Below, piece by piece: positions 6,161 to 14,638 of a DNA stretch of 39,577 nucleotides (its first letter is position 1; every line of letters starts with the position of its first letter). Where the stretch lies: the sequence record NC_010152.1. One strand, 5' to 3'. A program made the translations under genes and the position numbers. Below the pieces are notes generated by a model. The model did not search any database and was not told the origin of the DNA. It saw only the letters and a program-made list of their open reading frames with translations.

Positions 6161-6400
6161 GTGGTCGAAATGGAGAAGAGTCTAGAAGAGGAGATACAAG
6201 ATAGGATAAGAGATAGAATAGAATGTAGTGGATTTTTTAATTGTCGTGTTGTCCTATTTAAGACTGGCGAGAAGTCTGGAATTTTCTATATTCTAGCCGA
6301 AGCGGAGTACTGCGTAAGTGTGATAGATAAAGGGAAGTATGTTGTGTCCGGAGATTCGATTTTCATAGAATTGGGTTCAGGAGAAAAATTCTATATCTAA
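6161..6400 (+). CDS. Hypothetical protein (79 aa; start may be ATG 6170)
   Basis: ATTTATAT box at ~6130; acidic composition. Confidence 0.6.
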   Translation: MVEMEKSLEEEIQDRIRDRIECSGFFNCRVVLFKTGEKSGIFYILAEAEYCVSVIDKGKYVVSGDSIFIELGSGEKFYI

Positions 6401-6403
6401 AAG

Positions 6404-6835
6404 TCAACTAATTCTTATTTTTTTGAGTGCTCTTCGTGTAAGAATGTAGATTGCCCTTAATGCTTTCTTTTTTTCATTTTCGTCCTCGATTTTTTGTGCC
6501 AATTCTGTTATTGTGTTTATCGTCGTTATTATTTTATCAATTCCTTTTTTGTCAATTTCATAAGCATATCGTAGATCGATTGCAAATTCATACGCTTCTG
6601 CAATTTCTTTCTGTAGTTTCAGTTCTGTTGCTATTTTTTCTCCTTTTTCAGTTAGTATTGCAATATCTGTTAGTTTTGATTTATCTTTATCTACAATTAT
6701 TTTTATTTCTGTTAATCCTTTTTTCGTTAGGCTGTTTACTATTCTTCTAACTTTTCCGTCGCTAATGTTGATTTGTTTCTCATCTAGTAATTTTACGAGA
6801 ATTCTTTTTTCTCCTTTTGATAATTGTATTTCCAT
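6404..6835 (-). CDS. Winged-helix DNA-binding protein (143 aa), possible Acr-associated regulator
   Basis: Start at MEIQLSK after a GGTGAG SD. LSKGEKRILVKLL...VRRIVNSLTKKGLTEI is a wHTH pattern. Lies immediately downstream of acrIII-1. Confidence 0.7.
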   Translation of the reverse strand: MEIQLSKGEKRILVKLLDEKQINISDGKVRRIVNSLTKKGLTEIKIIVDKDKSKLTDIAILTEKGEKIATELKLQKEIAEAYEFAIDLRYAYEIDKKGIDKIITTINTITELAQKIEDENEKKKALRAIYILTRRALKKIRIS

Positions 6836-6879
6836 CTTTTTCTCACCTTTTGTTTTAAAGAAATAGGAATAGAAAAAAA

Positions 6880-7209
6880 TTATTGAATTTCGAATAACCA
6901 AAGTTCATATCCTATTTTTTCCAGTTCTTCTGTCGTTTTAATTACGACACCTTCAGGGAGGCGTTGCTTTAAAGAAAATGCTAATATTTTGTCTCCGTGG
7001 CTTGCTTTTATAGCAATCCTGTTTACTGGGATATTAACTCCTAAGACGTTCGACAAGAGTTCTGCTGTTGCTTGATGACCTACGGCTGATACGAAGTTCT
7101 CCTTGTGCAATAATTCTCTTGCTTCTTGGATAGTTATTTCCTTTGCCTTTACAATATACTCCTCCCCCTCTTTCAAGGGGAGGATTGCAGAATTGAGTAG
7201 ATATAGCAT
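6880..7209 (-). CDS. acrIII-1: AcrIII-1 viral ring nuclease (DUF1874; AFV3-109/STIV B116 family)
   Basis: MLYLLNS N-terminus, SAVGH (H45), NR (R64) and RLPEG (R83, E86), with the catalytic spacing known for SIRV1 gp29. Confidence 0.93.
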   Translation of the reverse strand: MLYLLNSAILPLKEGEEYIVKAKEITIQEARELLHKENFVSAVGHQATAELLSNVLGVNIPVNRIAIKASHGDKILAFSLKQRLPEGVVIKTTEELEKIGYELWLFEIQ

Positions 7210-7230
7210 ATGTTCTACTACAATCTTTGA

Positions 7231-7249
7231 ATATATAAATTTTTCTTTC
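7231..7249 (-). promoter_or_regulatory. Strong BRE-TATA promoter of acrIII-1
   Basis: GAAAGAAAAATTTATATAT ends ~21 nt before the ATG. Confidence 0.85.
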
Positions 7250-7304
7250 GGTGAACTTGATCTTTGATCTTTATGAAGAGAAGAAGGGAAGCAAAAAAAG
7301 AAGA

Positions 7305-7964
7305 TTAATCTATAGCAGGCGGAGGATGTACGAGAATGTATGCGCCCGGTTTTAATTGAATCGGGTTGTGATCCTTGCTTTTTATTTCTGTTGTTTCATC
7401 TATTTTTATCAATATGCCGTCATAAATCCCTATATGCTCTATCGCTGTCTCTGTATAATGGTTGTAATATTCTAATTGTCCTTTTACAAATTTGATATTT
7501 TCTGGTATATTTGGTATGCTGTAAATTTCTAGATTTCCTTGTGTTACTGTCGGTTGTAATTGTATTGTCGGTGCTTTTCTTGCAATAAATATGTTTATCG
7601 AGTAGTTATCAAATTTTGCTAGGTATTTCCTCTCTGTGTCTAGATATTTTTTCAGTAAGTCCCCGTACGTTGCTATAAAGTTCTGTTCGATTAACAGATT
7701 TTCTCTGGTCAGTTTAAAGTCAGCTTCAAAAGACATTTTTTTCCAATTTATTATCCATAGACCTCTTGTTAGTTTCGCCGATATTTCTCCGTTTTCATTT
7801 ATTTCTATTTTGTAGCATCCATGAGACGTCATTCCACTGTTGCTCGCATATTTTTGGCAATCAATGACTCGCTCTTCTTTTCCCAATATTATCTTGTAGA
7901 CCCATTGATTTATTCCCTTTAATTGGAATGCGGGATATGGTAACACTTCTATTTGAGACTCCAC
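7305..7964 (-). CDS. AcrIIIB1-like anti-CRISPR candidate (219 aa)
   Basis: C-terminal KGQLEY..HI...DGILIKID..EIKSKDH...YILVHPPP.ID matches my recollection of the SIRV2 gp48 (AcrIIIB1) C-terminus. GTG start with an AGGTGAGG SD; next to acrIII-1. Confidence 0.65.
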   Translation of the reverse strand: MESQIEVLPYPAFQLKGINQWVYKIILGKEERVIDCQKYASNSGMTSHGCYKIEINENGEISAKLTRGLWIINWKKMSFEADFKLTRENLLIEQNFIATYGDLLKKYLDTERKYLAKFDNYSINIFIARKAPTIQLQPTVTQGNLEIYSIPNIPENIKFVKGQLEYYNHYTETAIEHIGIYDGILIKIDETTEIKSKDHNPIQLKPGAYILVHPPPAID

Positions 7965-7994
7965 ACTACCTCACCTATCTAAGTAATTGTCAAG

Positions 7995-8015
7995 AAGGAT
8001 ATATAAATATTTCTC
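7995..8015 (-). promoter_or_regulatory. Early-type promoter, identical copy 1
   Basis: GAGAAATATTTATATATCCTT, identical to 8475-8495. Confidence 0.9.
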
Positions 8016-8104
8016 CTACAATTTGTCGTACTAAAATTTGAATAATAGAGTAGTTGACGAAATAAGGAAATCAGAAATTGAAAAGGAAAAAAATAATTAC
8101 CTTT

Positions 8105-8446
8105 TTATGAAGAACAGCAGTAGATTGCCCTGCCGAACTCATCAACGAATATTGGTCCGTCTTCGCTAGTTAGCTTCTCAATTAGTTCGTTCCAGGATTT
8201 TAGCTTAAATTTATTTAATATGCATTTTAGGTCCATAAGATATCCAAAAAAGAGTGTGTCCGCTCCGTCATAAAGTTCAACTCTTATTTCGTCGCCTTCT
8301 GGGACGACTCTTATTTTTGTTTTTAAGTCAATAAGTTCATTAAAACCTGACTCAAAAACCTTTAGCCATATTTCATTACCTTTTAGTTCAAAGTCGAATA
8401 TCAATGCGTTACACTCATTTTCTTCTTCATTTTCTTCACTATTCAT
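8105..8446 (-). CDS. Acidic hypothetical protein (113 aa), anti-defence candidate
   Basis: Own strong promoter and T-rich terminator. Confidence 0.8.
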   Translation of the reverse strand: MNSEENEEENECNALIFDFELKGNEIWLKVFESGFNELIDLKTKIRVVPEGDEIRVELYDGADTLFFGYLMDLKCILNKFKLKSWNELIEKLTSEDGPIFVDEFGRAIYCCSS

Positions 8447-8474
8447 ATTCTCCCCTAGCCATAATTTAGGATAA

Positions 8475-8495
8475 AAGGATATATAAATATTTCTC
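8475..8495 (-). promoter_or_regulatory. Early-type promoter, identical copy 2
   Basis: 21/21 identity with 7995-8015. Confidence 0.9.
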
Positions 8496-8631
8496 TCTGT
8501 CTTTTCTGTTTATGAAGATATAATTACTAATAATCGTATTAGTCAATTGAAGTCAGTATCAGTATATTTTAAAGAAGAAATAATAATGTGAAAAGTAAAA
8601 AAATGAAGTAAAAAAATAACTTATCTTAAAT

Positions 8632-8892
8632 TTATTCATTTCCCCATATCATGAGACCTAAATCCTTGGGGGACAATTCTTTTAATTCTCTAAAACTCTC
8701 AACTCCGAAATTTTCAATATATTCTTTTGTATCGTCAATATACCATCCGTTTTTGTCCTGGAATATGATCTTGATTCTCTTGCTATCCTCTTCATCCTGG
8801 AATATCTTAGCAACCTCTTCTAATTTGTTTTCGTCATTAAATTTATAAATTATTACTTTATTTTTTTCGATTTCTTTTTCATATTTTGCCAT
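8632..8892 (-). CDS. Hypothetical protein (86 aa), anti-defence candidate
   Basis: Own promoter (AAGATATATATA), GAGGGA SD, T-rich terminator. Confidence 0.8.
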   Translation of the reverse strand: MAKYEKEIEKNKVIIYKFNDENKLEEVAKIFQDEEDSKRIKIIFQDKNGWYIDDTKEYIENFGVESFRELKELSPKDLGLMIWGNE

Positions 8893-9081
8893 TTCTTCTT
8901 CCCTCTTATTATATTTCTGATCCCCCCTATATATATCTTATTATGATTAGATTACCGACACTCTGAATATTTATCTCAAGAAGATGAGAAAATAGTGGAA
9001 ATCGATAAATATTTTTAGCAGATAAAGATAGTAAAAATATCTGAAAAGTGAAAAAAATGGTAAATAAAAAATAGAATAACT

Positions 9082-9570
9082 TTACCTGAAGTGTTTTAGA
9101 TCGTAGAGTTTGTAACATGCTAACTCGATTTCTCTGTCTCTGCATTCTTCTTTGTACATTTGTATTTTTACCGATAGCTTCTCTCTCCATAGATATTTTA
9201 GTAATTCCTTAATAAAAATTTCTTCCAGTTTCCAGTTTGTGTAGCAATGCTCTTCTTGGCACTTACATTCTTTAAAGATCATTTCTAGAAACATTTTGTT
9301 CTGTATAGTTTCTAATAATCGTAAATTGTAGTTCCAAAATTCAACGGTGAAATCAGTTACATGAAAGTCAAATTCTATTGTTTTTCTTTCTGCAAGTTTG
9401 TCGTCAATCCATAGATAATCCATCACTCTTACCGTTATTTCATTTCCATATTCTTTTGGTCTTCTTGGTATTGATATTGCGACTTCTTTTTCTAAGAATT
9501 TACCTTGCCACCCAGATAAAAAAATATTTGTCTCAAAATTATTTTTTGAAATTGAAGTTACATACCTCAT
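9082..9570 (-). CDS. Hypothetical protein (162 aa), anti-defence candidate
   Basis: Own promoter (CAAAAAGACTTATATATCC) and GGGGGA SD. Confidence 0.8.
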   Translation of the reverse strand: MRYVTSISKNNFETNIFLSGWQGKFLEKEVAISIPRRPKEYGNEITVRVMDYLWIDDKLAERKTIEFDFHVTDFTVEFWNYNLRLLETIQNKMFLEMIFKECKCQEEHCYTNWKLEEIFIKELLKYLWREKLSVKIQMYKEECRDREIELACYKLYDLKHFR

Positions 9571-9606
9571 AGTATCCCCCTTTTAATTATTATATTTTGG
9601 GAAAAT

Positions 9607-9626
9607 GGATATATAAGTCTTTTTGC
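9607..9626 (-). promoter_or_regulatory. Early-type promoter of ORF162
   Basis: GCAAAAAGACTTATATATCC. Confidence 0.8.
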
Positions 9627-9700
9627 GATACTTTACGCCGTTTTGCTTCTTATTATTGAGACTTTCTTCTTTTATAGTATTACTATGTAATTGTCTAATT

Positions 9701-9853
9701 ATGAGTCTAGAATATGAAATTCTAAAAGTTGAGTGTAAAGAGAAAAATTGCTTTGTAACCGTCAAACTAATAAGAAATGGTACAATAGAGATTTTCAATT
9801 CTGTACCAATTGAAAATATAAATAAACTGATAGAGAATTTCTCATTTTTTTAG
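9701..9853 (+). CDS. Small hypothetical protein (50 aa, MSLEYEIL...)
   Basis: Internal ATG of the tracked ORF 9623-9853, with TTTTATA ~25 nt upstream (leaderless). Confidence 0.5.
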   Translation: MSLEYEILKVECKEKNCFVTVKLIRNGTIEIFNSVPIENINKLIENFSFF

Positions 9854-9943
9854 TCGAAAAATAATTTTTGATTCTGTATAATACCAAATTGGTTTTCAAT
9901 TTCACTTTCTATGTGTGTAGGAAAAAGTTTACATTCACATTAT

Positions 9944-10270
9944 CAAAATTTTACTAGTTGAGCTTATACCTTATTAGTCTAGTTTACGCTTAGCATTTTT
10001 GAAATGTAGTTAATACCCGCATTTTTTATTTCAAGAAGAGAGATCAATTAACGTTTGTCTGCACAAAATTCTACTATCCTGATTTATACTTTACTAGTCA
10101 AGTTTAAATTGTAAACCAGGCGGGAAAGTCTTGTAATTGTCAAGTTTGAACTATAATAAAAGAATTGAGAGGATTAGGAAATTGTGAAGAAGAATGAAAA
10201 CAATTAACGTTTGTCCGCACAAAAATCTACTAGACTTACTTATACTTTACTATTCAGATATACGCTTAGC
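9944..10270 (+). repeat. Three degenerate direct repeats in a non-coding region
   Basis: 10045-10101 and 10201-10257 share CAATTAACGTTTGTC(T/C)GCACAAAA(T/A)TCTACTA...TTATACTTTACTA. 9944-9994 is a partial copy ending in TACGCTTAGC, as does 10261-10270. Confidence 0.85.
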
Positions 10271-10309
10271 TGATTTACAATTAATATAGAAATTTTATTA
10301 CAAAAATTT

Positions 10310-10390
10310 GAAAAATTACTTGAAAACTGAGAAAATACCCTAATTTGAGGCATCTTCTTACTCTAGAACAAAGTTTTCAAGTAATTTTTC
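10310..10390. repeat. Perfect 19-bp inverted repeat with a 43-bp spacer
   Basis: GAAAAATTACTTGAAAACT (10310-10328) and AGTTTTCAAGTAATTTTTC (10372-10390). Confidence 0.9.
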
Positions 10391-10900
10391 TATTGTATGT
10401 AATATATTTTGTAAAGTGTAATAAAGTGATCTTAATGTGGAGAAAAAGATATATAAGCTTATTATTCAATATGTATAATAGTGAAGGCTATGGAAGGGGA
10501 AAGTGTGATTCAGAGAATTGAGAAAACACATGAGATGGTAAAAAAACTAATAGAATTAGAGAGTCAACAGGAGGACATATGCATACAAATCTATCAAATG
10601 ATTGAACAATATGAGGATACGTTGTTACATGAAAAGGGAAGAGAAAAGTTTTTACAAATGAGAACTGAAATTCATAGTTTGTGTATGAATGCGCACAGGT
10701 CTCTGTTTCAATTAAAGCATGTATTTGCCGATTTGCTTTACGAAAGTTAATTCCCTTTTTTTTATTTGTTATTCATTCTTGATGAAGAGAATGGAACAGC
10801 ATGTATTATTTATAAATTATATAAGCAATTTTTCTATTGTATTTAATATATTTTGTAAAGTGCAATAAAGCGATCTAATTCTAGAGAAAAAGATATATAA
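10379..10900 (+). repeat. Duplicated 78-bp upstream/promoter block
   Basis: 10379-10456 versus 10823-10900: 70/78 identical, both ending in GAGAAAAAGATATATAA. Confidence 0.9.
10490..10750 (+). CDS. Helical hypothetical protein (86 aa), paralog A
   Basis: ATG chosen from the promoter and SD spacing; C-terminal CxxxxxxLFxL..VF.D.LY motif shared with the next ORF. Confidence 0.8.
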   Translation: MEGESVIQRIEKTHEMVKKLIELESQQEDICIQIYQMIEQYEDTLLHEKGREKFLQMRTEIHSLCMNAHRSLFQLKHVFADLLYES

Positions 10901-10933
10901 ATGTTTAAGGTAATATGTATAGTAGGGGAAAGT

Positions 10934-11188
10934 ATGGAAGAAGTAAATATATCTAAAAAAGTAACAATGGAAGAAACAAGAAAGCAATTGTTGAAAGAAC
11001 TTGAAGTATTAGAAAAGGTAAACGAAATTTTGAATAACATAGACAAAATAATGGCAGAGTTGGGCGATATATGCTATTCGGCAAGAGAATTAATGCCCCA
11101 GGTCAGAAAGGATCTAATAGGACAGTGTTCTGAGATTCAGAAAAAATTGTACAAACTGTATGACATAATTTCTGATACAGTATATTAA
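10934..11188 (+). CDS. Helical hypothetical protein (84 aa), paralog B
   Basis: ATG after AGGGGA; same upstream block as paralog A; QCSEIQKKLYKLYDIISDTVY. Confidence 0.8.
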   Translation: MEEVNISKKVTMEETRKQLLKELEVLEKVNEILNNIDKIMAELGDICYSARELMPQVRKDLIGQCSEIQKKLYKLYDIISDTVY

Positions 11189-11219
11189 AGTCAATTCTCT
11201 TTTTTTTATTCTTCTTTCG

Positions 11220-11349
11220 TTCTTGATGGAGAGAATTCTGAGTTATACTATAATTCATATATTATATATATGAATTATGTGTTTTCTCTTATTCTTGATG
11301 GAGAGAATGGTGTGGTATGCATTATACCTATATTATATATAGGTATAAT
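11220..11349 (+). repeat. Two 72-bp-spaced units, each a TTCTTGATGGAGAGAAT 17-mer plus a 13-bp-arm palindrome
   Basis: 17-mers at 11220-11236 and 11292-11308, with a 1-mismatch copy at 10776-10792. Palindromes at 11250-11278 and 11321-11349, both with a TAT loop. Confidence 0.85.
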
Positions 11350-11381
11350 AGTGTGTATAAAAAGTTCATATAAAAACAAAA

Positions 11382-14235: not shown

Positions 14236-14604
14236 ATGCAAGCAGTCCAAGTAGAGAAGGAAAAGCCGGAAATGAACCAAAACATGAATTTTTTAGCATC
14301 GTCAGTCTACGAAACCCACGACTTGAGAGACAAGATAAAGCCTGGGCAAAAGTTCGTTATTAGGCAGGGCGATTTAATAATCGCAAATTACTCTATAGAC
14401 TATCCAAGAAGGCACGGATTACGTTCTGTAAGTCCAGTCACAGAGAACATAAACGGAAGGTTAATTGATGTATTCAGGGATTCCCACTTTATTCTACATA
14501 CTGAAGAGTTTATGTCAATCTATCATTCCGAACACGGATTAGTGATAATACCAGCAAAGGGACAAAGGTTTAGCTACTACGTTATCAATGAAGCGATTGA
14601 TTGA
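14236..14604 (+). CDS. RQGD...HxEH-type small protein (122 aa)
   Basis: IRQGDLII and IYHSEHGLVIIP motifs. Confidence 0.75.
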   Translation: MQAVQVEKEKPEMNQNMNFLASSVYETHDLRDKIKPGQKFVIRQGDLIIANYSIDYPRRHGLRSVSPVTENINGRLIDVFRDSHFILHTEEFMSIYHSEHGLVIIPAKGQRFSYYVINEAID

Positions 14605-14638
14605 AAAGTTTATATATTTTTTTCTCCTACTTTTTCTT

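What the first reader, a model, noticed from the sequence alone, without database searches (positions are those of the whole stretch)
7231..11188. Array of single-gene cassettes behind one strong promoter motif marks new anti-defence candidates
Seen in sequence: a shared A-rich-BRE plus TATATA motif precedes acrIII-1, ORF219, ORF113, ORF86, ORF162 and the two helical paralogs. Two copies are 21/21 identical (7995-8015, 8475-8495) and two share GAGAAAAAGATATATAA. Each gene ends in a T-tract, and three downstream regions share GAAAAG...AAAAAAT on the + strand (~8080, ~8590, ~9045). Established: archaeal-virus Acrs are early genes behind conserved strong promoters. Inference: ORFs 8105-8446, 8632-8892, 9082-9570, 10490-10750 and 10934-11188 are uncharacterised anti-CRISPR or anti-defence proteins.
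Basis: partly seen in the sequence, partly recalled or inferred. Interest (0 to 1): 0.75.

Follow-up and report, generated by a model that had tools for sequence, protein, structure and literature searches.

The report
AFV6 early anti-defence gene island
This stretch of an archaeal virus genome (Acidianus filamentous virus 6) is a row of small single-gene units, each with its own strong promoter and terminator, two of which belong to known anti-CRISPR families; the idea that the rest are anti-defence candidates is reasonable but was largely published in 2024.

Summary
The window is the complete AFV6 genome (NC_010152). A purine-rich BRE plus TATATA motif (RAGAAAWAKWTATATA) precedes ORF109, ORF219, ORF113, ORF89 and ORF84b strongly, and ORF86 and ORF162 more weakly. 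There are 9 matches against 0.85 expected, and leave-one-out ranks are 4-32 of 79,116 positions. Every one of these genes ends in a T7-8 tract.

ORF219 is an AcrIIIB1 homologue (hhalign 97.9% to SIRV2 gp48). The real gene at 9701-9853(+) is a conserved ORF50; the annotated ORF71a is not. Bhoobalan-Chitty et al. 2024 (PMC11065993) already applied this promoter logic to AFV6. They list gp17 (AcrIIIB1), gp18/ORF113 (ADG.36), gp16 (AcrIII-1), and the families of ORF162 (ADG.34) and ORF86 (ADG.43 in ARV2).

Only ORF89 and ORF84b are new candidates. ORF84b is predicted as a single long coiled-coil helix, so the pair may be regulators rather than inhibitors.

The same motif marks validated Acr genes (SIFV2 gp15, SIRV2 gp47) and small-ORF cassettes in the same genomic position in AFV3/7/8/9 and metagenomic relatives. 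Cassette content varies while the regulatory flanks are conserved. No function could be assigned to ORF113, ORF86 or ORF162: they have no detectable sequence or family relatives, and the ORF162 model matches no known fold.

The parts
6880..7209 (-). ORF109 (gp16), DUF1874 / AcrIII-1 family
   Evidence: Pfam PF08960 8e-32. 82% identical to the crystallised AFV3-109 (2J6B) and related to SIRV1 gp29 (6SCF), with the GH motif aligned.
7230..7249 (-). BRE+TATA promoter of ORF109 (GAAAGAAAAATTTATATATT)
   Evidence: PWM 20.6, leave-one-out rank 9 of 79,116. 22 nt from TATATA to the ATG, so near-leaderless.
7305..7964 (-). ORF219 (gp17), AcrIIIB1-family protein
   Evidence: tblastn reaches SIRV2 gp48 over 93% of its length. 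Profile-profile probability 97.9%, E 6e-13 over 177 columns. Listed as AcrIIIB1 in PMC11065993 Suppl. Data 1.
7998..8017 (-). promoter of ORF219
   Evidence: PWM 24.2, leave-one-out rank 4. 21-nt core identical to the ORF113 promoter.
8105..8446 (-). ORF113 (gp18), acidic orphan (pI 4.3); cassette 8024-8472 is absent from AFV3/7/8
   Evidence: No hits in Pfam, PHROGs, PDB or the phage collection. One 93% homologue on Logan contig L010, dN/dS 0.07. ADG.36 in PMC11065993.
8478..8497 (-). promoter of ORF113
   Evidence: PWM 24.2. Similarity to contig L010 begins just upstream of this BRE.
8632..8892 (-). ORF86 (gp19), small acidic protein
   Evidence: phrog_20350. Homologues: AFV8 94%, AFV3 71%, ARV2 gp41 45% (ADG.43), SSRV1 gp36 41%; ARV2 gp40 at hhalign probability 90.8. 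dN/dS 0.15.
8928..8947 (-). promoter of ORF86 (weaker BRE: ATCATAATAAGATATATATA)
   Evidence: PWM 16.2 but leave-one-out rank 32. Identical in AFV8 and 19/20 in AFV3.
9082..9570 (-). ORF162 (gp20), orphan alpha/beta protein with five invariant Cys (C102, C104, C109, C143, C152)
   Evidence: Family is AFV6, AFV3 and AFV8 plus one metagenomic member among 1.84 billion representatives. AF2 pLDDT 82, pTM 0.76, with no fold match in PDB or BFVD except itself. AFV3 and AFV8 members are ADG.34.
9608..9627 (-). promoter of ORF162 (CGCAAAAAGACTTATATATC)
   Evidence: PWM 19.4, leave-one-out rank 32.
9701..9853 (+). ORF50, conserved core gene not annotated in AFV6; not preceded by the motif
   Evidence: phrog_17461 1e-31. 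86-92% identity to AFV3/7/8 and 65% to SIFV2 gp18. dN/dS 0.07-0.19. The antisense ORF71a is interrupted by a stop in AFV3/7/8.
9860..10370 (.). conserved non-coding spacer with 61-nt direct repeats and a 42-nt inverted repeat
   Evidence: 86% identical to AFV7. No Rfam match.
10438..10457 (+). promoter of ORF89
   Evidence: PWM 22.8, leave-one-out rank 7.
10490..10750 (+). ORF89 (gp22), helical; coding part unique to AFV6
   Evidence: No tblastn hit other than itself. 20% identity to ORF84b, pairwise E 3e-5. Flanks are duplicated with the ORF84b cassette.
10882..10901 (+). promoter of ORF84b
   Evidence: PWM 22.3, leave-one-out rank 6. Identical 20-mer in AFV3 and AFV8.
10934..11188 (+). ORF84b (gp23), predicted single long coiled-coil helix
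   Evidence: AF2 predicts helix 2-83, pLDDT 92. 79% of heptad a/d positions are hydrophobic against 46% overall. AFV3 81%, AFV7 70% identity. dN/dS 0.15-0.20.
10370..11257 (+). tandem duplication of a 444-nt cassette unit (10370-10813 and 10814-11257)
   Evidence: Promoter flank 127 nt at 80% identity and terminator flank 71 nt at 75%, while the coding parts are about 20% identical at protein level.
6873..6879 (-). T7 terminator tract of ORF109
7293..7299 (-). T7 terminator tract of ORF219
8087..8093 (-). T7 terminator tract of ORF113
8597..8616 (-). two T7 terminator tracts of ORF86
9051..9057 (-). T7 terminator tract of ORF162
10756..10763 (+). T8 terminator tract of ORF89
11200..11207 (+). 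T8 terminator tract of ORF84b
6161..6835 (.). left part of the island: ORF79b (gp14, ADG.35 in the 2024 paper) and ORF143a (weak MntR-like wHTH, possible regulator)

Best explanation
The segment (about 6.1-11.3 kb of AFV6) is the accessory 'early / anti-defence island' found in the same genomic position in other betalipothrixviruses. It is a row of self-contained monocistronic expression cassettes.

Each cassette has four parts:
- a purine-rich TFB-recognition element directly abutting a TATA box (RAGAAAWAKWTATATA);
- then, 22-39 nt on, the start codon, which in most cassettes follows a short leader with a GGGGA/GGTGA Shine-Dalgarno-like element;
- a small ORF;
- a T7-8 terminator.

Shown: the motif, its specificity within the genome, the terminators, the membership of two cassettes in known anti-CRISPR families (ORF109 in AcrIII-1/DUF1874, ORF219 in AcrIIIB1), the conservation of this architecture in relatives, and turnover of cassette content between conserved regulatory flanks.

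Inferred:
- Host TBP/TFB/RNA polymerase recognise these promoters without viral factors, so the genes are transcribed strongly and immediately after entry.
- The T-tracts insulate each unit.
- ORF113, ORF86 and ORF162 are host-interaction proteins, most likely inhibitors of host immunity (CRISPR type I or III, or another system). They are lineage-restricted orphans, and the first two are acidic.
- ORF84b and ORF89 are coiled-coil proteins that may instead regulate or scaffold.
- The conserved promoter and terminator flanks probably serve as homology for recombination, which swaps, duplicates and deletes cassettes.
For: Motif enrichment and specificity. Terminators.

The AFV6 PWM finds the promoters of small single genes in the equivalent islands of AFV3/7/8/9 and SIFV2. 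These include the validated AcrIA gene SIFV2 gp15. It also finds SIRV2 gp47 (AcrIA3) (PMC11065993 section 9; bioRxiv 10.1101/2024.04.02.587611 abstract). It also finds clusters of 62-119 aa ORFs next to the helicase/ORF50 in metagenomic relatives.

Known families: ORF219 is AcrIIIB1. ORF109 is DUF1874.

Island variability: the ORF113 cassette and the ORF89 coding part are unique to AFV6, and ORF86 and ORF162 are absent from AFV7, while promoters, terminators and flanking genes are conserved. The cassette boundary sits just upstream of the BRE in contig L010.

The ORFs tested are real genes under purifying selection: dN/dS 0.07-0.20 for ORF113, ORF86 and ORF84b (dS is saturated for ORF162 and ORF89 has no orthologue). 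ORF162 and ORF219 have dN 2-4 times that of neighbours such as ORF109, ORF143a and the helicase ORF564.

Independent publication of the same logic, with AFV6 included: PMC11065993.
Against: - There are no expression data for AFV6, so 'early' is extrapolated from SIRV2 (PMC11065993 section 6).
- The core BRE/TATA is the canonical strong Sulfolobales promoter. ORF86 and ORF162 sites are not clearly separable from other AFV6 promoters in leave-one-out scoring.
- The 2024 paper put the AFV6 DUF1874 gene in its low-probability list. It notes that AcrIII-1 (SIRV2 gp37) does not act as an Acr in a natural setting.
- In the only screen of a lipothrixvirus island, 1 of 6 candidates scored against the systems tested.
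- No homology, domain or fold links any of the five ORFs to a defence component or a known Acr.
Confidence: 0.7

Rival explanations
1. The motif is only the generic strong archaeal promoter. The genes are simply highly expressed accessory genes of mixed function, such as host takeover, cell-cycle control, superinfection exclusion or transcription regulation. On this view the promoter says nothing about anti-defence.
For: The core equals the canonical BRE+TATA (PMC11065993 section 6). One equally good site serves ORF91 outside the island. ORF86 and ORF162 sites rank only 32nd in leave-one-out scoring. The 2024 paper itself annotates some motif-bearing genes as 'host cell cycle regulation?' or as regulators.
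Against: Genome-wide, the top PWM hits are confined to this 3.7-kb stretch. Structural-gene promoters (for example ORF204, CCAAAGGTTTATATATTTG) lack the GAGAAA element and score below 12. Two of the seven genes are in Acr families. The same motif drives validated Acrs in SIFV2 and SIRV2.
Confidence: 0.2
2. ORF84b and ORF89 (and AFV8 ORF88) are coiled-coil or leucine-zipper-like regulators of the island (Aca-like), or scaffolds. They are not inhibitors of a defence system.
For: AF2 predicts one uninterrupted 82-residue helix, with a continuous heptad pattern. PMC11065993 proposes a coiled-coil leucine-zipper protein (SMV2 gp37) as a repressor of ADG promoters. Conserved inverted repeats and repeated TTCTTGATGRAGAGAAT + palindrome units surround these two cassettes. 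ORF84b is comparatively conserved (70-81% identity, dN/dS 0.15-0.20).
Against: The proteins are acidic (pI 5.0-5.3) and have no basic DNA-binding segment. The slot holds very divergent alleles (ORF88, ORF89), which is unusual for a regulator tied to a conserved operator.
Confidence: 0.3
3. Some of the small ORFs are not genes, and the promoters drive non-coding transcripts.
For: One annotated ORF in the region (ORF71a) is indeed spurious. About 500 bp of conserved non-coding repeats lie in the island.
Against: dN/dS is 0.07-0.20 for ORF113, ORF86 and ORF84b. Full-length conservation of ORF162 with invariant Cys, and SD-like elements at a fixed distance before each ATG, also argue for coding genes. 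ORF89 alone has no orthologue to test.
Confidence: 0.05

Closest known systems
Regulatory-sequence-defined anti-defence genes (ADGs) of Sulfolobales viruses (Bhoobalan-Chitty et al., Nat Commun 2024, PMC11065993)
   Same: The logic and architecture are the same: single genes, a purine-rich BRE + TATA shared within one virus, and clustering near one end of lipothrixvirus genomes. AFV6 itself was analysed. The paper lists gp13, gp14, gp17 and gp18 in its main list, and gp16, gp27 and gp29 in its low-probability list. ADG.34 is the ORF162 family, and ADG.43 and ADG.47 are rudiviral ORF86 relatives.
   Different: AFV6 gp19 (ORF86), gp20 (ORF162), gp22 (ORF89) and gp23 (ORF84b) are not in that table. 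The ORF84b/ORF89/ORF88 family is not listed for any virus.
AcrIIIB1 (SIRV2 gp48; also called AcrIA4)
   Same: ORF219 aligns over about 180 residues and shares the C..Y.S.SGMT..GC, QGHL.(I/V)Y, YNH, S.DH and HP motifs. It is a single gene behind the strong promoter.
   Different: Only about 22% identity to SIRV2 gp48. Activity against Acidianus type III or type I-A systems is untested.
AcrIII-1 / DUF1874 ring nuclease (SIRV1 gp29; AFV3-109 structure 2J6B)
   Same: ORF109 is 82% identical to AFV3-109 and matches PF08960 full length.
   Different: The family's role as an anti-CRISPR in native infections is disputed (PMC11065993 section 7; bioRxiv 10.1101/2023.01.10.523387). Here, unlike in most viruses, the gene does carry the island motif.
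Bacteriophage acr-aca operons and anti-defence islands
   Same: Clusters of small, fast-evolving, often acidic orphan proteins expressed immediately on entry, recognisable by context and regulatory sequence.
   Different: Here there are separate monocistronic units with host-type archaeal promoters and oligo-T terminators, not an operon. No confirmed Aca is present: ORF49 is labelled 'ADa' in the 2024 paper, and ORF143a is only a weak wHTH lead.

Membership tests
Promoter-defined ADG class (PMC11065993) | Single gene, not in an operon | tested here: met
   Each of the seven genes has its own TATA box 22-39 nt upstream and a T6-or-longer tract starting within 17 nt after the stop.
Promoter-defined ADG class (PMC11065993) | Predicted strong promoter: purine-rich BRE directly upstream of the TATA box | tested here: met
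   RAGAAAWAKW+TATATA at five genes. The A-rich element is weaker at ORF86 and ORF162.
Promoter-defined ADG class (PMC11065993) | Regulatory sequence shared among several genes of the same virus | tested here: met
   9 matches against 0.85 expected. Leave-one-out ranks are 4-9 for five sites and 32 for two, which are borderline.
Promoter-defined ADG class (PMC11065993) | Immediate-early transcription | not testable with these tools
   No AFV6 transcriptome was found in the library.
Promoter-defined ADG class (PMC11065993) | Inhibition of a host defence system | not testable with these tools
   Needs an infection or interference assay. No homology to known Acrs for ORF113, ORF86, ORF162, ORF89 or ORF84b.
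AcrIIIB1 (for ORF219) | Sequence homology to SIRV2 gp48 over most of its length | tested here: met
   tblastn 93% coverage, E 4e-3, with a chain of intermediates at 1e-11. blastp 3e-8 against the 79-protein local database of island proteins. hhalign 97.9%, E 6e-13.
AcrIIIB1 (for ORF219) | Inhibition of type III-B (Cmr) interference | not testable with these tools
   Functional assay required.
AcrIII-1 / DUF1874 (for ORF109) | Full-length match to PF08960 and to solved family members | tested here: met
   PF08960 8e-32 against a cut-off of 26 bits. 2J6B 4e-56, 6SCF 5e-7.
AcrIII-1 / DUF1874 (for ORF109) | cA4 ring-nuclease activity; conserved active-site His | tested here: inconclusive
   The GH(Q/D)(A/S)T motif aligns with SIRV1 and STIV homologues. 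Identification of this His as catalytic rests on my memory of the literature, and activity was not tested.
Zinc-binding protein (for ORF162) | Conserved Cys/His cluster in a recognisable Zn-finger/ribbon fold | tested here: inconclusive
   Five invariant Cys (CxCx4C...C...C) in four family members. The loop is modelled with low confidence (pLDDT below 50 at 105-109). No Zn-finger family or fold match.

The most novel reading that the evidence does not exclude
The conserved promoter (BRE-TATA plus leader) and terminator flanks are more than expression signals. They may act as the homology 'handles' of an integrase-free cassette-exchange system, in which betalipothrixviruses and co-resident rudiviruses trade, duplicate and replace anti-defence ORFs.

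Evidence consistent with this:
- Similarity between AFV6 and contig L010 starts just upstream of the BRE of the ORF113 cassette.
- The ORF89 and ORF84b units share 75-80% identical flanks but only about 20% identical proteins.
- AFV8 ORF88 occupies the same slot, with breakpoints at codon 11 and at the stop codon.
- ORF86 relatives sit in rudivirus termini; ARV2 and SSRV1 are both from Italy, and I recall the AFVs as isolates from the Pozzuoli solfatara there.

Within this reading, the ORF84b/ORF89/ORF88 coiled-coil family would be a new, rapidly diversifying anti-defence or regulator family.
Probability: 0.3. Interest if true: 0.55.

Novelty: new member of a known kind. Interest (0 to 1): 0.3.

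Why it matters
Archaeal anti-defence proteins are very poorly sampled. The 2024 paper counted only four Acr families (AcrID1, AcrIIIB1, AcrIIIB2, AcrIII-1) before adding an AcrIA and an anti-TA protein.

A correct list of promoter-marked cassettes in AFV6 gives a short, testable set of candidates. ORF113, ORF86 and ORF162 are the stronger ones, and ORF84b and ORF89 are new additions. Recognising ORF219 as AcrIIIB1 and ORF50 as the real gene corrects the annotation.

The general principle is already published, so the gain is incremental: a few extra candidates and a clearer picture of the cassette boundaries.

Tried and rejected
- Bacterial sigma-70 and intrinsic-terminator scan. Irrelevant for an archaeal virus, so ignored.
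- PDB sequence hits of ORF162 to WD40 proteins, E 1e-10. They come from one 18-residue stretch summed over repeats, with 0 stretches passing on their own. Rejected as an artefact; the fold search found nothing.
- NCBIfam hit of ORF89 to RNA polymerase subunit F (E 2e-4, 21.5 bits against a cut-off of 156). It was not reproduced against PDB, where only designed helical repeats and FliS appear. Rejected as helical-composition similarity.
- ORF113 against SIRV2 gp47 (AcrIA3), and all five ORFs against AcrID1-family proteins, SIFV2 gp15 (AcrIA) and the other island proteins of AFV9, SIFV2, ARV2 and SSRV1. No link was found by blastp or hhalign, except ORF86 to ARV2 gp40/gp41 and SSRV1 gp36.
- Large-database searches. 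ORF113 has one 93% relative, ORF162 has one new metagenomic member, and ORF86 has only AFV8 and AFV3. IMG/VR scans with ORF84b and ORF86 returned only AFV3/6/7/8. The 13 metagenome loci fetched with the helicase hold no homologue of the five ORFs.
- dN/dS as a test for positive selection. dS is saturated for the fast genes, and the measurable values are all 0.2 or below. This gives no evidence for positive selection, only for faster amino-acid divergence.
- Rfam on the whole genome and on the non-coding spacer: nothing.
- PADLOC: nothing.
- A minus-strand gene behind the PWM hit at 14609-14628: none exists, so the site belongs to the ORF91 promoter.
- The Vestergaard 2008 AFV paper is not held in the library.

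Full report
**Identity of the window.** The 39,577-nt window is 100% identical to the complete genome of Acidianus filamentous virus 6 (AFV6; Betalipothrixvirus pozzuoliense; AM087121/NC_010152; host Acidianus convivator). The finding spans these genes:
- gp16 (ORF109, 6880-7209 -)
- gp17 (ORF219, 7305-7964 -)
- gp18 (ORF113, 8105-8446 -)
- gp19 (ORF86, 8632-8892 -)
- gp20 (ORF162, 9082-9570 -)
- the annotated gp21 (ORF71a, 9583-9798 -)
- gp22 (ORF89, + strand)
- gp23 (ORF84b, 10934-11188 +)

Reading the sequence confirms the 21/21 identity of 7995-8015 and 8475-8495 (AAGGATATATAAATATTTCTC). It also confirms the shared GAGAAAAAGATATATAA at 10440 and 10884. On the gene strand the seven upstream regions align on TATATA, preceded by a purine-rich element:
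- ORF219: GTAGGAGAAATATT-TATATA
- ORF113: CAGAGAGAAATATT-TATATA
- ORF89: TGTGGAGAAAAAGA-TATATA
- ORF84b: TCTAGAGAAAAAGA-TATATA
- ORF109: CCGAAAGAAAAATT-TATATA
- ORF162: ATCGCAAAAAGACT-TATATA
- ORF86: TAATCATAATAAGA-TATATA

The degenerate pattern GAGAAAWAKWTATATA with up to 2 mismatches occurs 9 times against 0.85 expected, and 0 of 100 shuffles reach 9. Every match lies at those promoters, except one at 14611.

A 20-nt PWM puts all seven sites in the genome's top eight. Leave-one-out ranks are 4, 4, 6, 7 and 9 for ORF219, ORF113, ORF84b, ORF89 and ORF109. ORF86 and ORF162 rank 32 of 79,116 positions. So five sites share a specific motif. The other two carry a weaker BRE, although the AFV8 ORF162 orthologue has a better one (16.8).

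The extra site at 14609-14628 has no minus-strand ORF behind it. It is the symmetric TATA of the ORF91 promoter.

All seven genes have a run of at least six T starting within 17 nt of the stop codon. Only 10 of 57 genes outside the island do. The ATTTTTTT.CTTTTCA element after ORF113, ORF86 and ORF162 is present.

Most cassettes also share a GGGGA/GGTGA Shine-Dalgarno-like element 6-9 nt before the ATG, in a conserved TAGGGGAnAGT-ATG context. This implies short leaders rather than leaderless mRNAs. ORF109 is the exception, with only 22 nt from the TATA box to its ATG.

**What the genes are.**
- **ORF109** is a full-length DUF1874/AcrIII-1 protein. It matches PF08960 at 8e-32, is 82% identical to the crystallised AFV3-109 (2J6B), and is related to SIRV1 gp29 (6SCF).
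tblastn reaches SIRV2 gp48 through a chain of rudiviral intermediates. A profile-profile comparison gives 97.9% probability and E 6e-13 over 177 columns, with several shared motifs.
- **ORF113** is an acidic orphan (pI 4.3). Nothing matches in Pfam, PHROGs, NCBIfam, PADLOC, PDB or the phage collection. Among 5.8 billion clustered proteins it has one 93% relative, on a 1.8-kb Logan contig (L010). There it sits between an AFV7-like ORF161 and an ORF219 homologue. dN/dS is 0.07.
- **ORF86** has homologues in AFV8 (94%), AFV3 (71%) and the rudiviruses ARV2 (gp41, and gp40 at profile level) and SSRV1 (gp36). The rudiviral copies lie in the terminal single-gene regions.
- **ORF162** exists only in AFV6, AFV3 and AFV8 plus one metagenomic member among 1.84 billion representatives. 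It has five invariant cysteines, CxCx4C...C...C. Its AlphaFold model is confident (pLDDT 82, pTM 0.76) but has no structural neighbour in PDB or BFVD other than its own entry.
- **ORF84b** is predicted as a single uninterrupted helix (residues 2-83, pLDDT 92) with a continuous heptad pattern. This indicates a coiled coil, not a helical hairpin.
- **ORF89** is only weakly similar to ORF84b: 20% identity, pairwise E 3e-5, hhalign probability about 12%. Its paralogy is supported mainly by DNA. The two cassettes form a 444-nt tandem duplication whose promoter flank (127 nt, 80%) and terminator flank (71 nt, 75%) are conserved while the coding parts have diverged. AFV8 has a third very divergent allele (ORF88) in the same slot behind the identical promoter.

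**Context in relatives.** The island lies between conserved blocks: ORF183-ORF49 on the left and the helicase ORF564 on the right. DNA comparison with AFV3, AFV7 and AFV8 shows the following:
- The flanks, and the ORF79b-ORF143a-ORF109 part, are conserved.
- ORF219 is strongly diverged.
- The ORF113 cassette (8024-8472) is unique to AFV6.
- ORF86 and ORF162 are absent from AFV7, which carries ORF161 and ORF117 instead.
- The ORF89 coding part is unique to AFV6.
- The promoter and terminator segments remain 80-91% identical.

In L010, similarity to AFV6 upstream of the ORF113 homologue starts just upstream of the BRE. The exchangeable unit is therefore promoter + ORF + terminator.

The AFV6-derived PWM identifies the promoters of the equivalent small genes in AFV3, 7, 8, 9 and SIFV2. 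These include SIFV2 gp15 (18.7), the experimentally validated AcrIA. It also identifies SIRV2 gp47 (18.0), AcrIA3. In metagenomic betalipothrixvirus contigs, hits of 14 or more cluster next to the helicase/ORF50, each before a 62-119 aa ORF.

Amino-acid divergence (dN) of ORF162 and ORF219 is 2-4 times that of neighbours such as ORF109, ORF143a and the helicase ORF564. All measurable dN/dS values are 0.2 or below. So the ORFs tested are genuine, constrained genes and there is no direct evidence for positive selection.

**Prior art.** Bhoobalan-Chitty et al. 2024 (PMC11065993) formulated exactly this approach: single genes that share a virus-specific regulatory sequence with a purine-rich BRE and a TATA box. 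They applied it to AFV6. Their Supplementary Data 1 lists:

| AFV6 gene | Assignment in the paper |
|---|---|
| gp13 | ADG.60, 'ADa' |
| gp14 | ADG.35 |
| gp17 (ORF219) | AcrIIIB1 |
| gp18 (ORF113) | ADG.36 |
| gp16 (ORF109) | AcrIII-1, low-probability list |
| gp27, gp29 | low-probability list |

AFV3 gp20 and AFV8 gp16 (the ORF162 family) are ADG.34. ARV2 gp41 and gp40 (ORF86 relatives) are ADG.43 and ADG.47. AFV6 gp19, gp20, gp22 and gp23 are not listed, and no member of the ORF84b family is. The same paper cautions that only 1 of 6 SIFV2 candidates scored in its screen. It also notes that AcrIII-1 rarely carries the motif and does not behave as an Acr in native SIRV2 infection.

**Most likely mechanism.**

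Shown: a set of insulated monocistronic units with a shared strong host-type promoter and oligo-T terminators. Two units belong to Acr families. The architecture recurs at the same genomic position in relatives with variable content.

Inferred:
- The promoters recruit host TBP/TFB/RNAP without viral factors, so the set is expressed immediately and strongly.
- ORF113, ORF86 and ORF162 are probably host-defence inhibitors. I put this at roughly 0.3-0.5 each, and about 0.6-0.7 that at least one is.
- ORF84b and ORF89 may be coiled-coil regulators or scaffolds.
- Recombination between the conserved flanks generates the cassette turnover.

ORF143a has a weak MntR/DtxR-like wHTH signal. ORF49 is labelled 'ADa' in the paper. 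Both are candidate regulators of the island, but this is only a lead.

**Verdict.** The real additions are these:
- the AcrIIIB1 identity of ORF219;
- the ORF84b/ORF89/ORF88 coiled-coil family as an unlisted motif-bearing family;
- the definition of the cassette boundaries;
- the correction of ORF71a to ORF50.

Noticed in passing
window 9701-9853 (+) versus annotated ORF71a 9583-9798 (-): A conserved 50-aa gene (ORF50) is not annotated in AFV6. It is 86-92% identical to AFV3/7/8 and 65% to SIFV2 gp18, and matches phrog_17461. In SIFV2 and metagenomic relatives it lies directly after the helicase on the same strand, whereas in AFV3/6/7/8 it is inverted and separated from the helicase. The annotated antisense ORF71a is broken by a stop in AFV3/7/8, so it is a shadow ORF.
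   Followed up: yes
window 9860-10370: About 500 nt of gene-free DNA that is 86% identical to AFV7. It contains 61-nt direct repeats (10040-10100 and 10196-10256, spacing 156; a weaker copy at about 9935-9990), and AFV7 has three copies. No Rfam match. The function is unknown; protein-binding sites, an origin or small RNAs are possibilities.
   Followed up: partly
window 10287-10328 / 10372-10413: A 42-nt inverted repeat (83% complementary, 43-nt spacer) lies immediately upstream of the ORF89 promoter. The right arm is part of the unit duplicated upstream of ORF84b and is conserved in AFV3/7/8.
   Followed up: no
window 10772-10826, 11218-11280, 11291-11352 (related: 7257-7282): There are three copies of TTCTTGATGRAGAGAAT followed by an AT-rich palindrome. 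Perfect 13-nt arms occur at 11250-11278 and 11321-11349. The copies lie after the ORF89 and ORF84b terminators and before the 3' end of the helicase gene. A similar ATGAAGAGAA element lies upstream of the ORF109 promoter.
   Followed up: no
window 6404-6835 (-), ORF143a: A basic protein (pI 9.5) with weak MntR/DtxR-like winged-helix similarity: NCBIfam 9.5e-4, PDB 0.02, phrog_11046 'transcriptional regulator' 0.002, and hhalign probability 65% to SSRV1 gp37. It may be a regulator of the island.
   Followed up: partly
window 14599-14628: This is the only strong motif match outside the island. It is the symmetric BRE/TATA of ORF91 (gp27), which is pADG.04 in the 2024 paper's low-probability list. 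There is no minus-strand ORF behind it.
   Followed up: yes
window 8468-8487 (+) and 9598-9617 (+): The promoters are quasi-palindromic, so the opposite strand also scores as BRE+TATA (15.7 and 10.1). They could fire divergently, towards antisense of ORF86 and towards ORF50 respectively.
   Followed up: no
L010 1-365 (Logan SRR12124856 contig): Upstream of the AFV7-like ORF161 there are two copies of a GC-richer element, GAATTATCCCCCC..GCCGGGGTTCACGA...CTCACGCCCTCAT..CGGGCAACAA. This is unlike anything in the AFV6 island. AFV7 has a 730-nt gene-free gap next to its ORF161, between gp13 and gp14.
   Followed up: no
window 8408-8446 (N-terminus of ORF113): There is a 12-nt (four-codon) indel in the acidic EENE repeat relative to the L010 homologue.
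   Followed up: no
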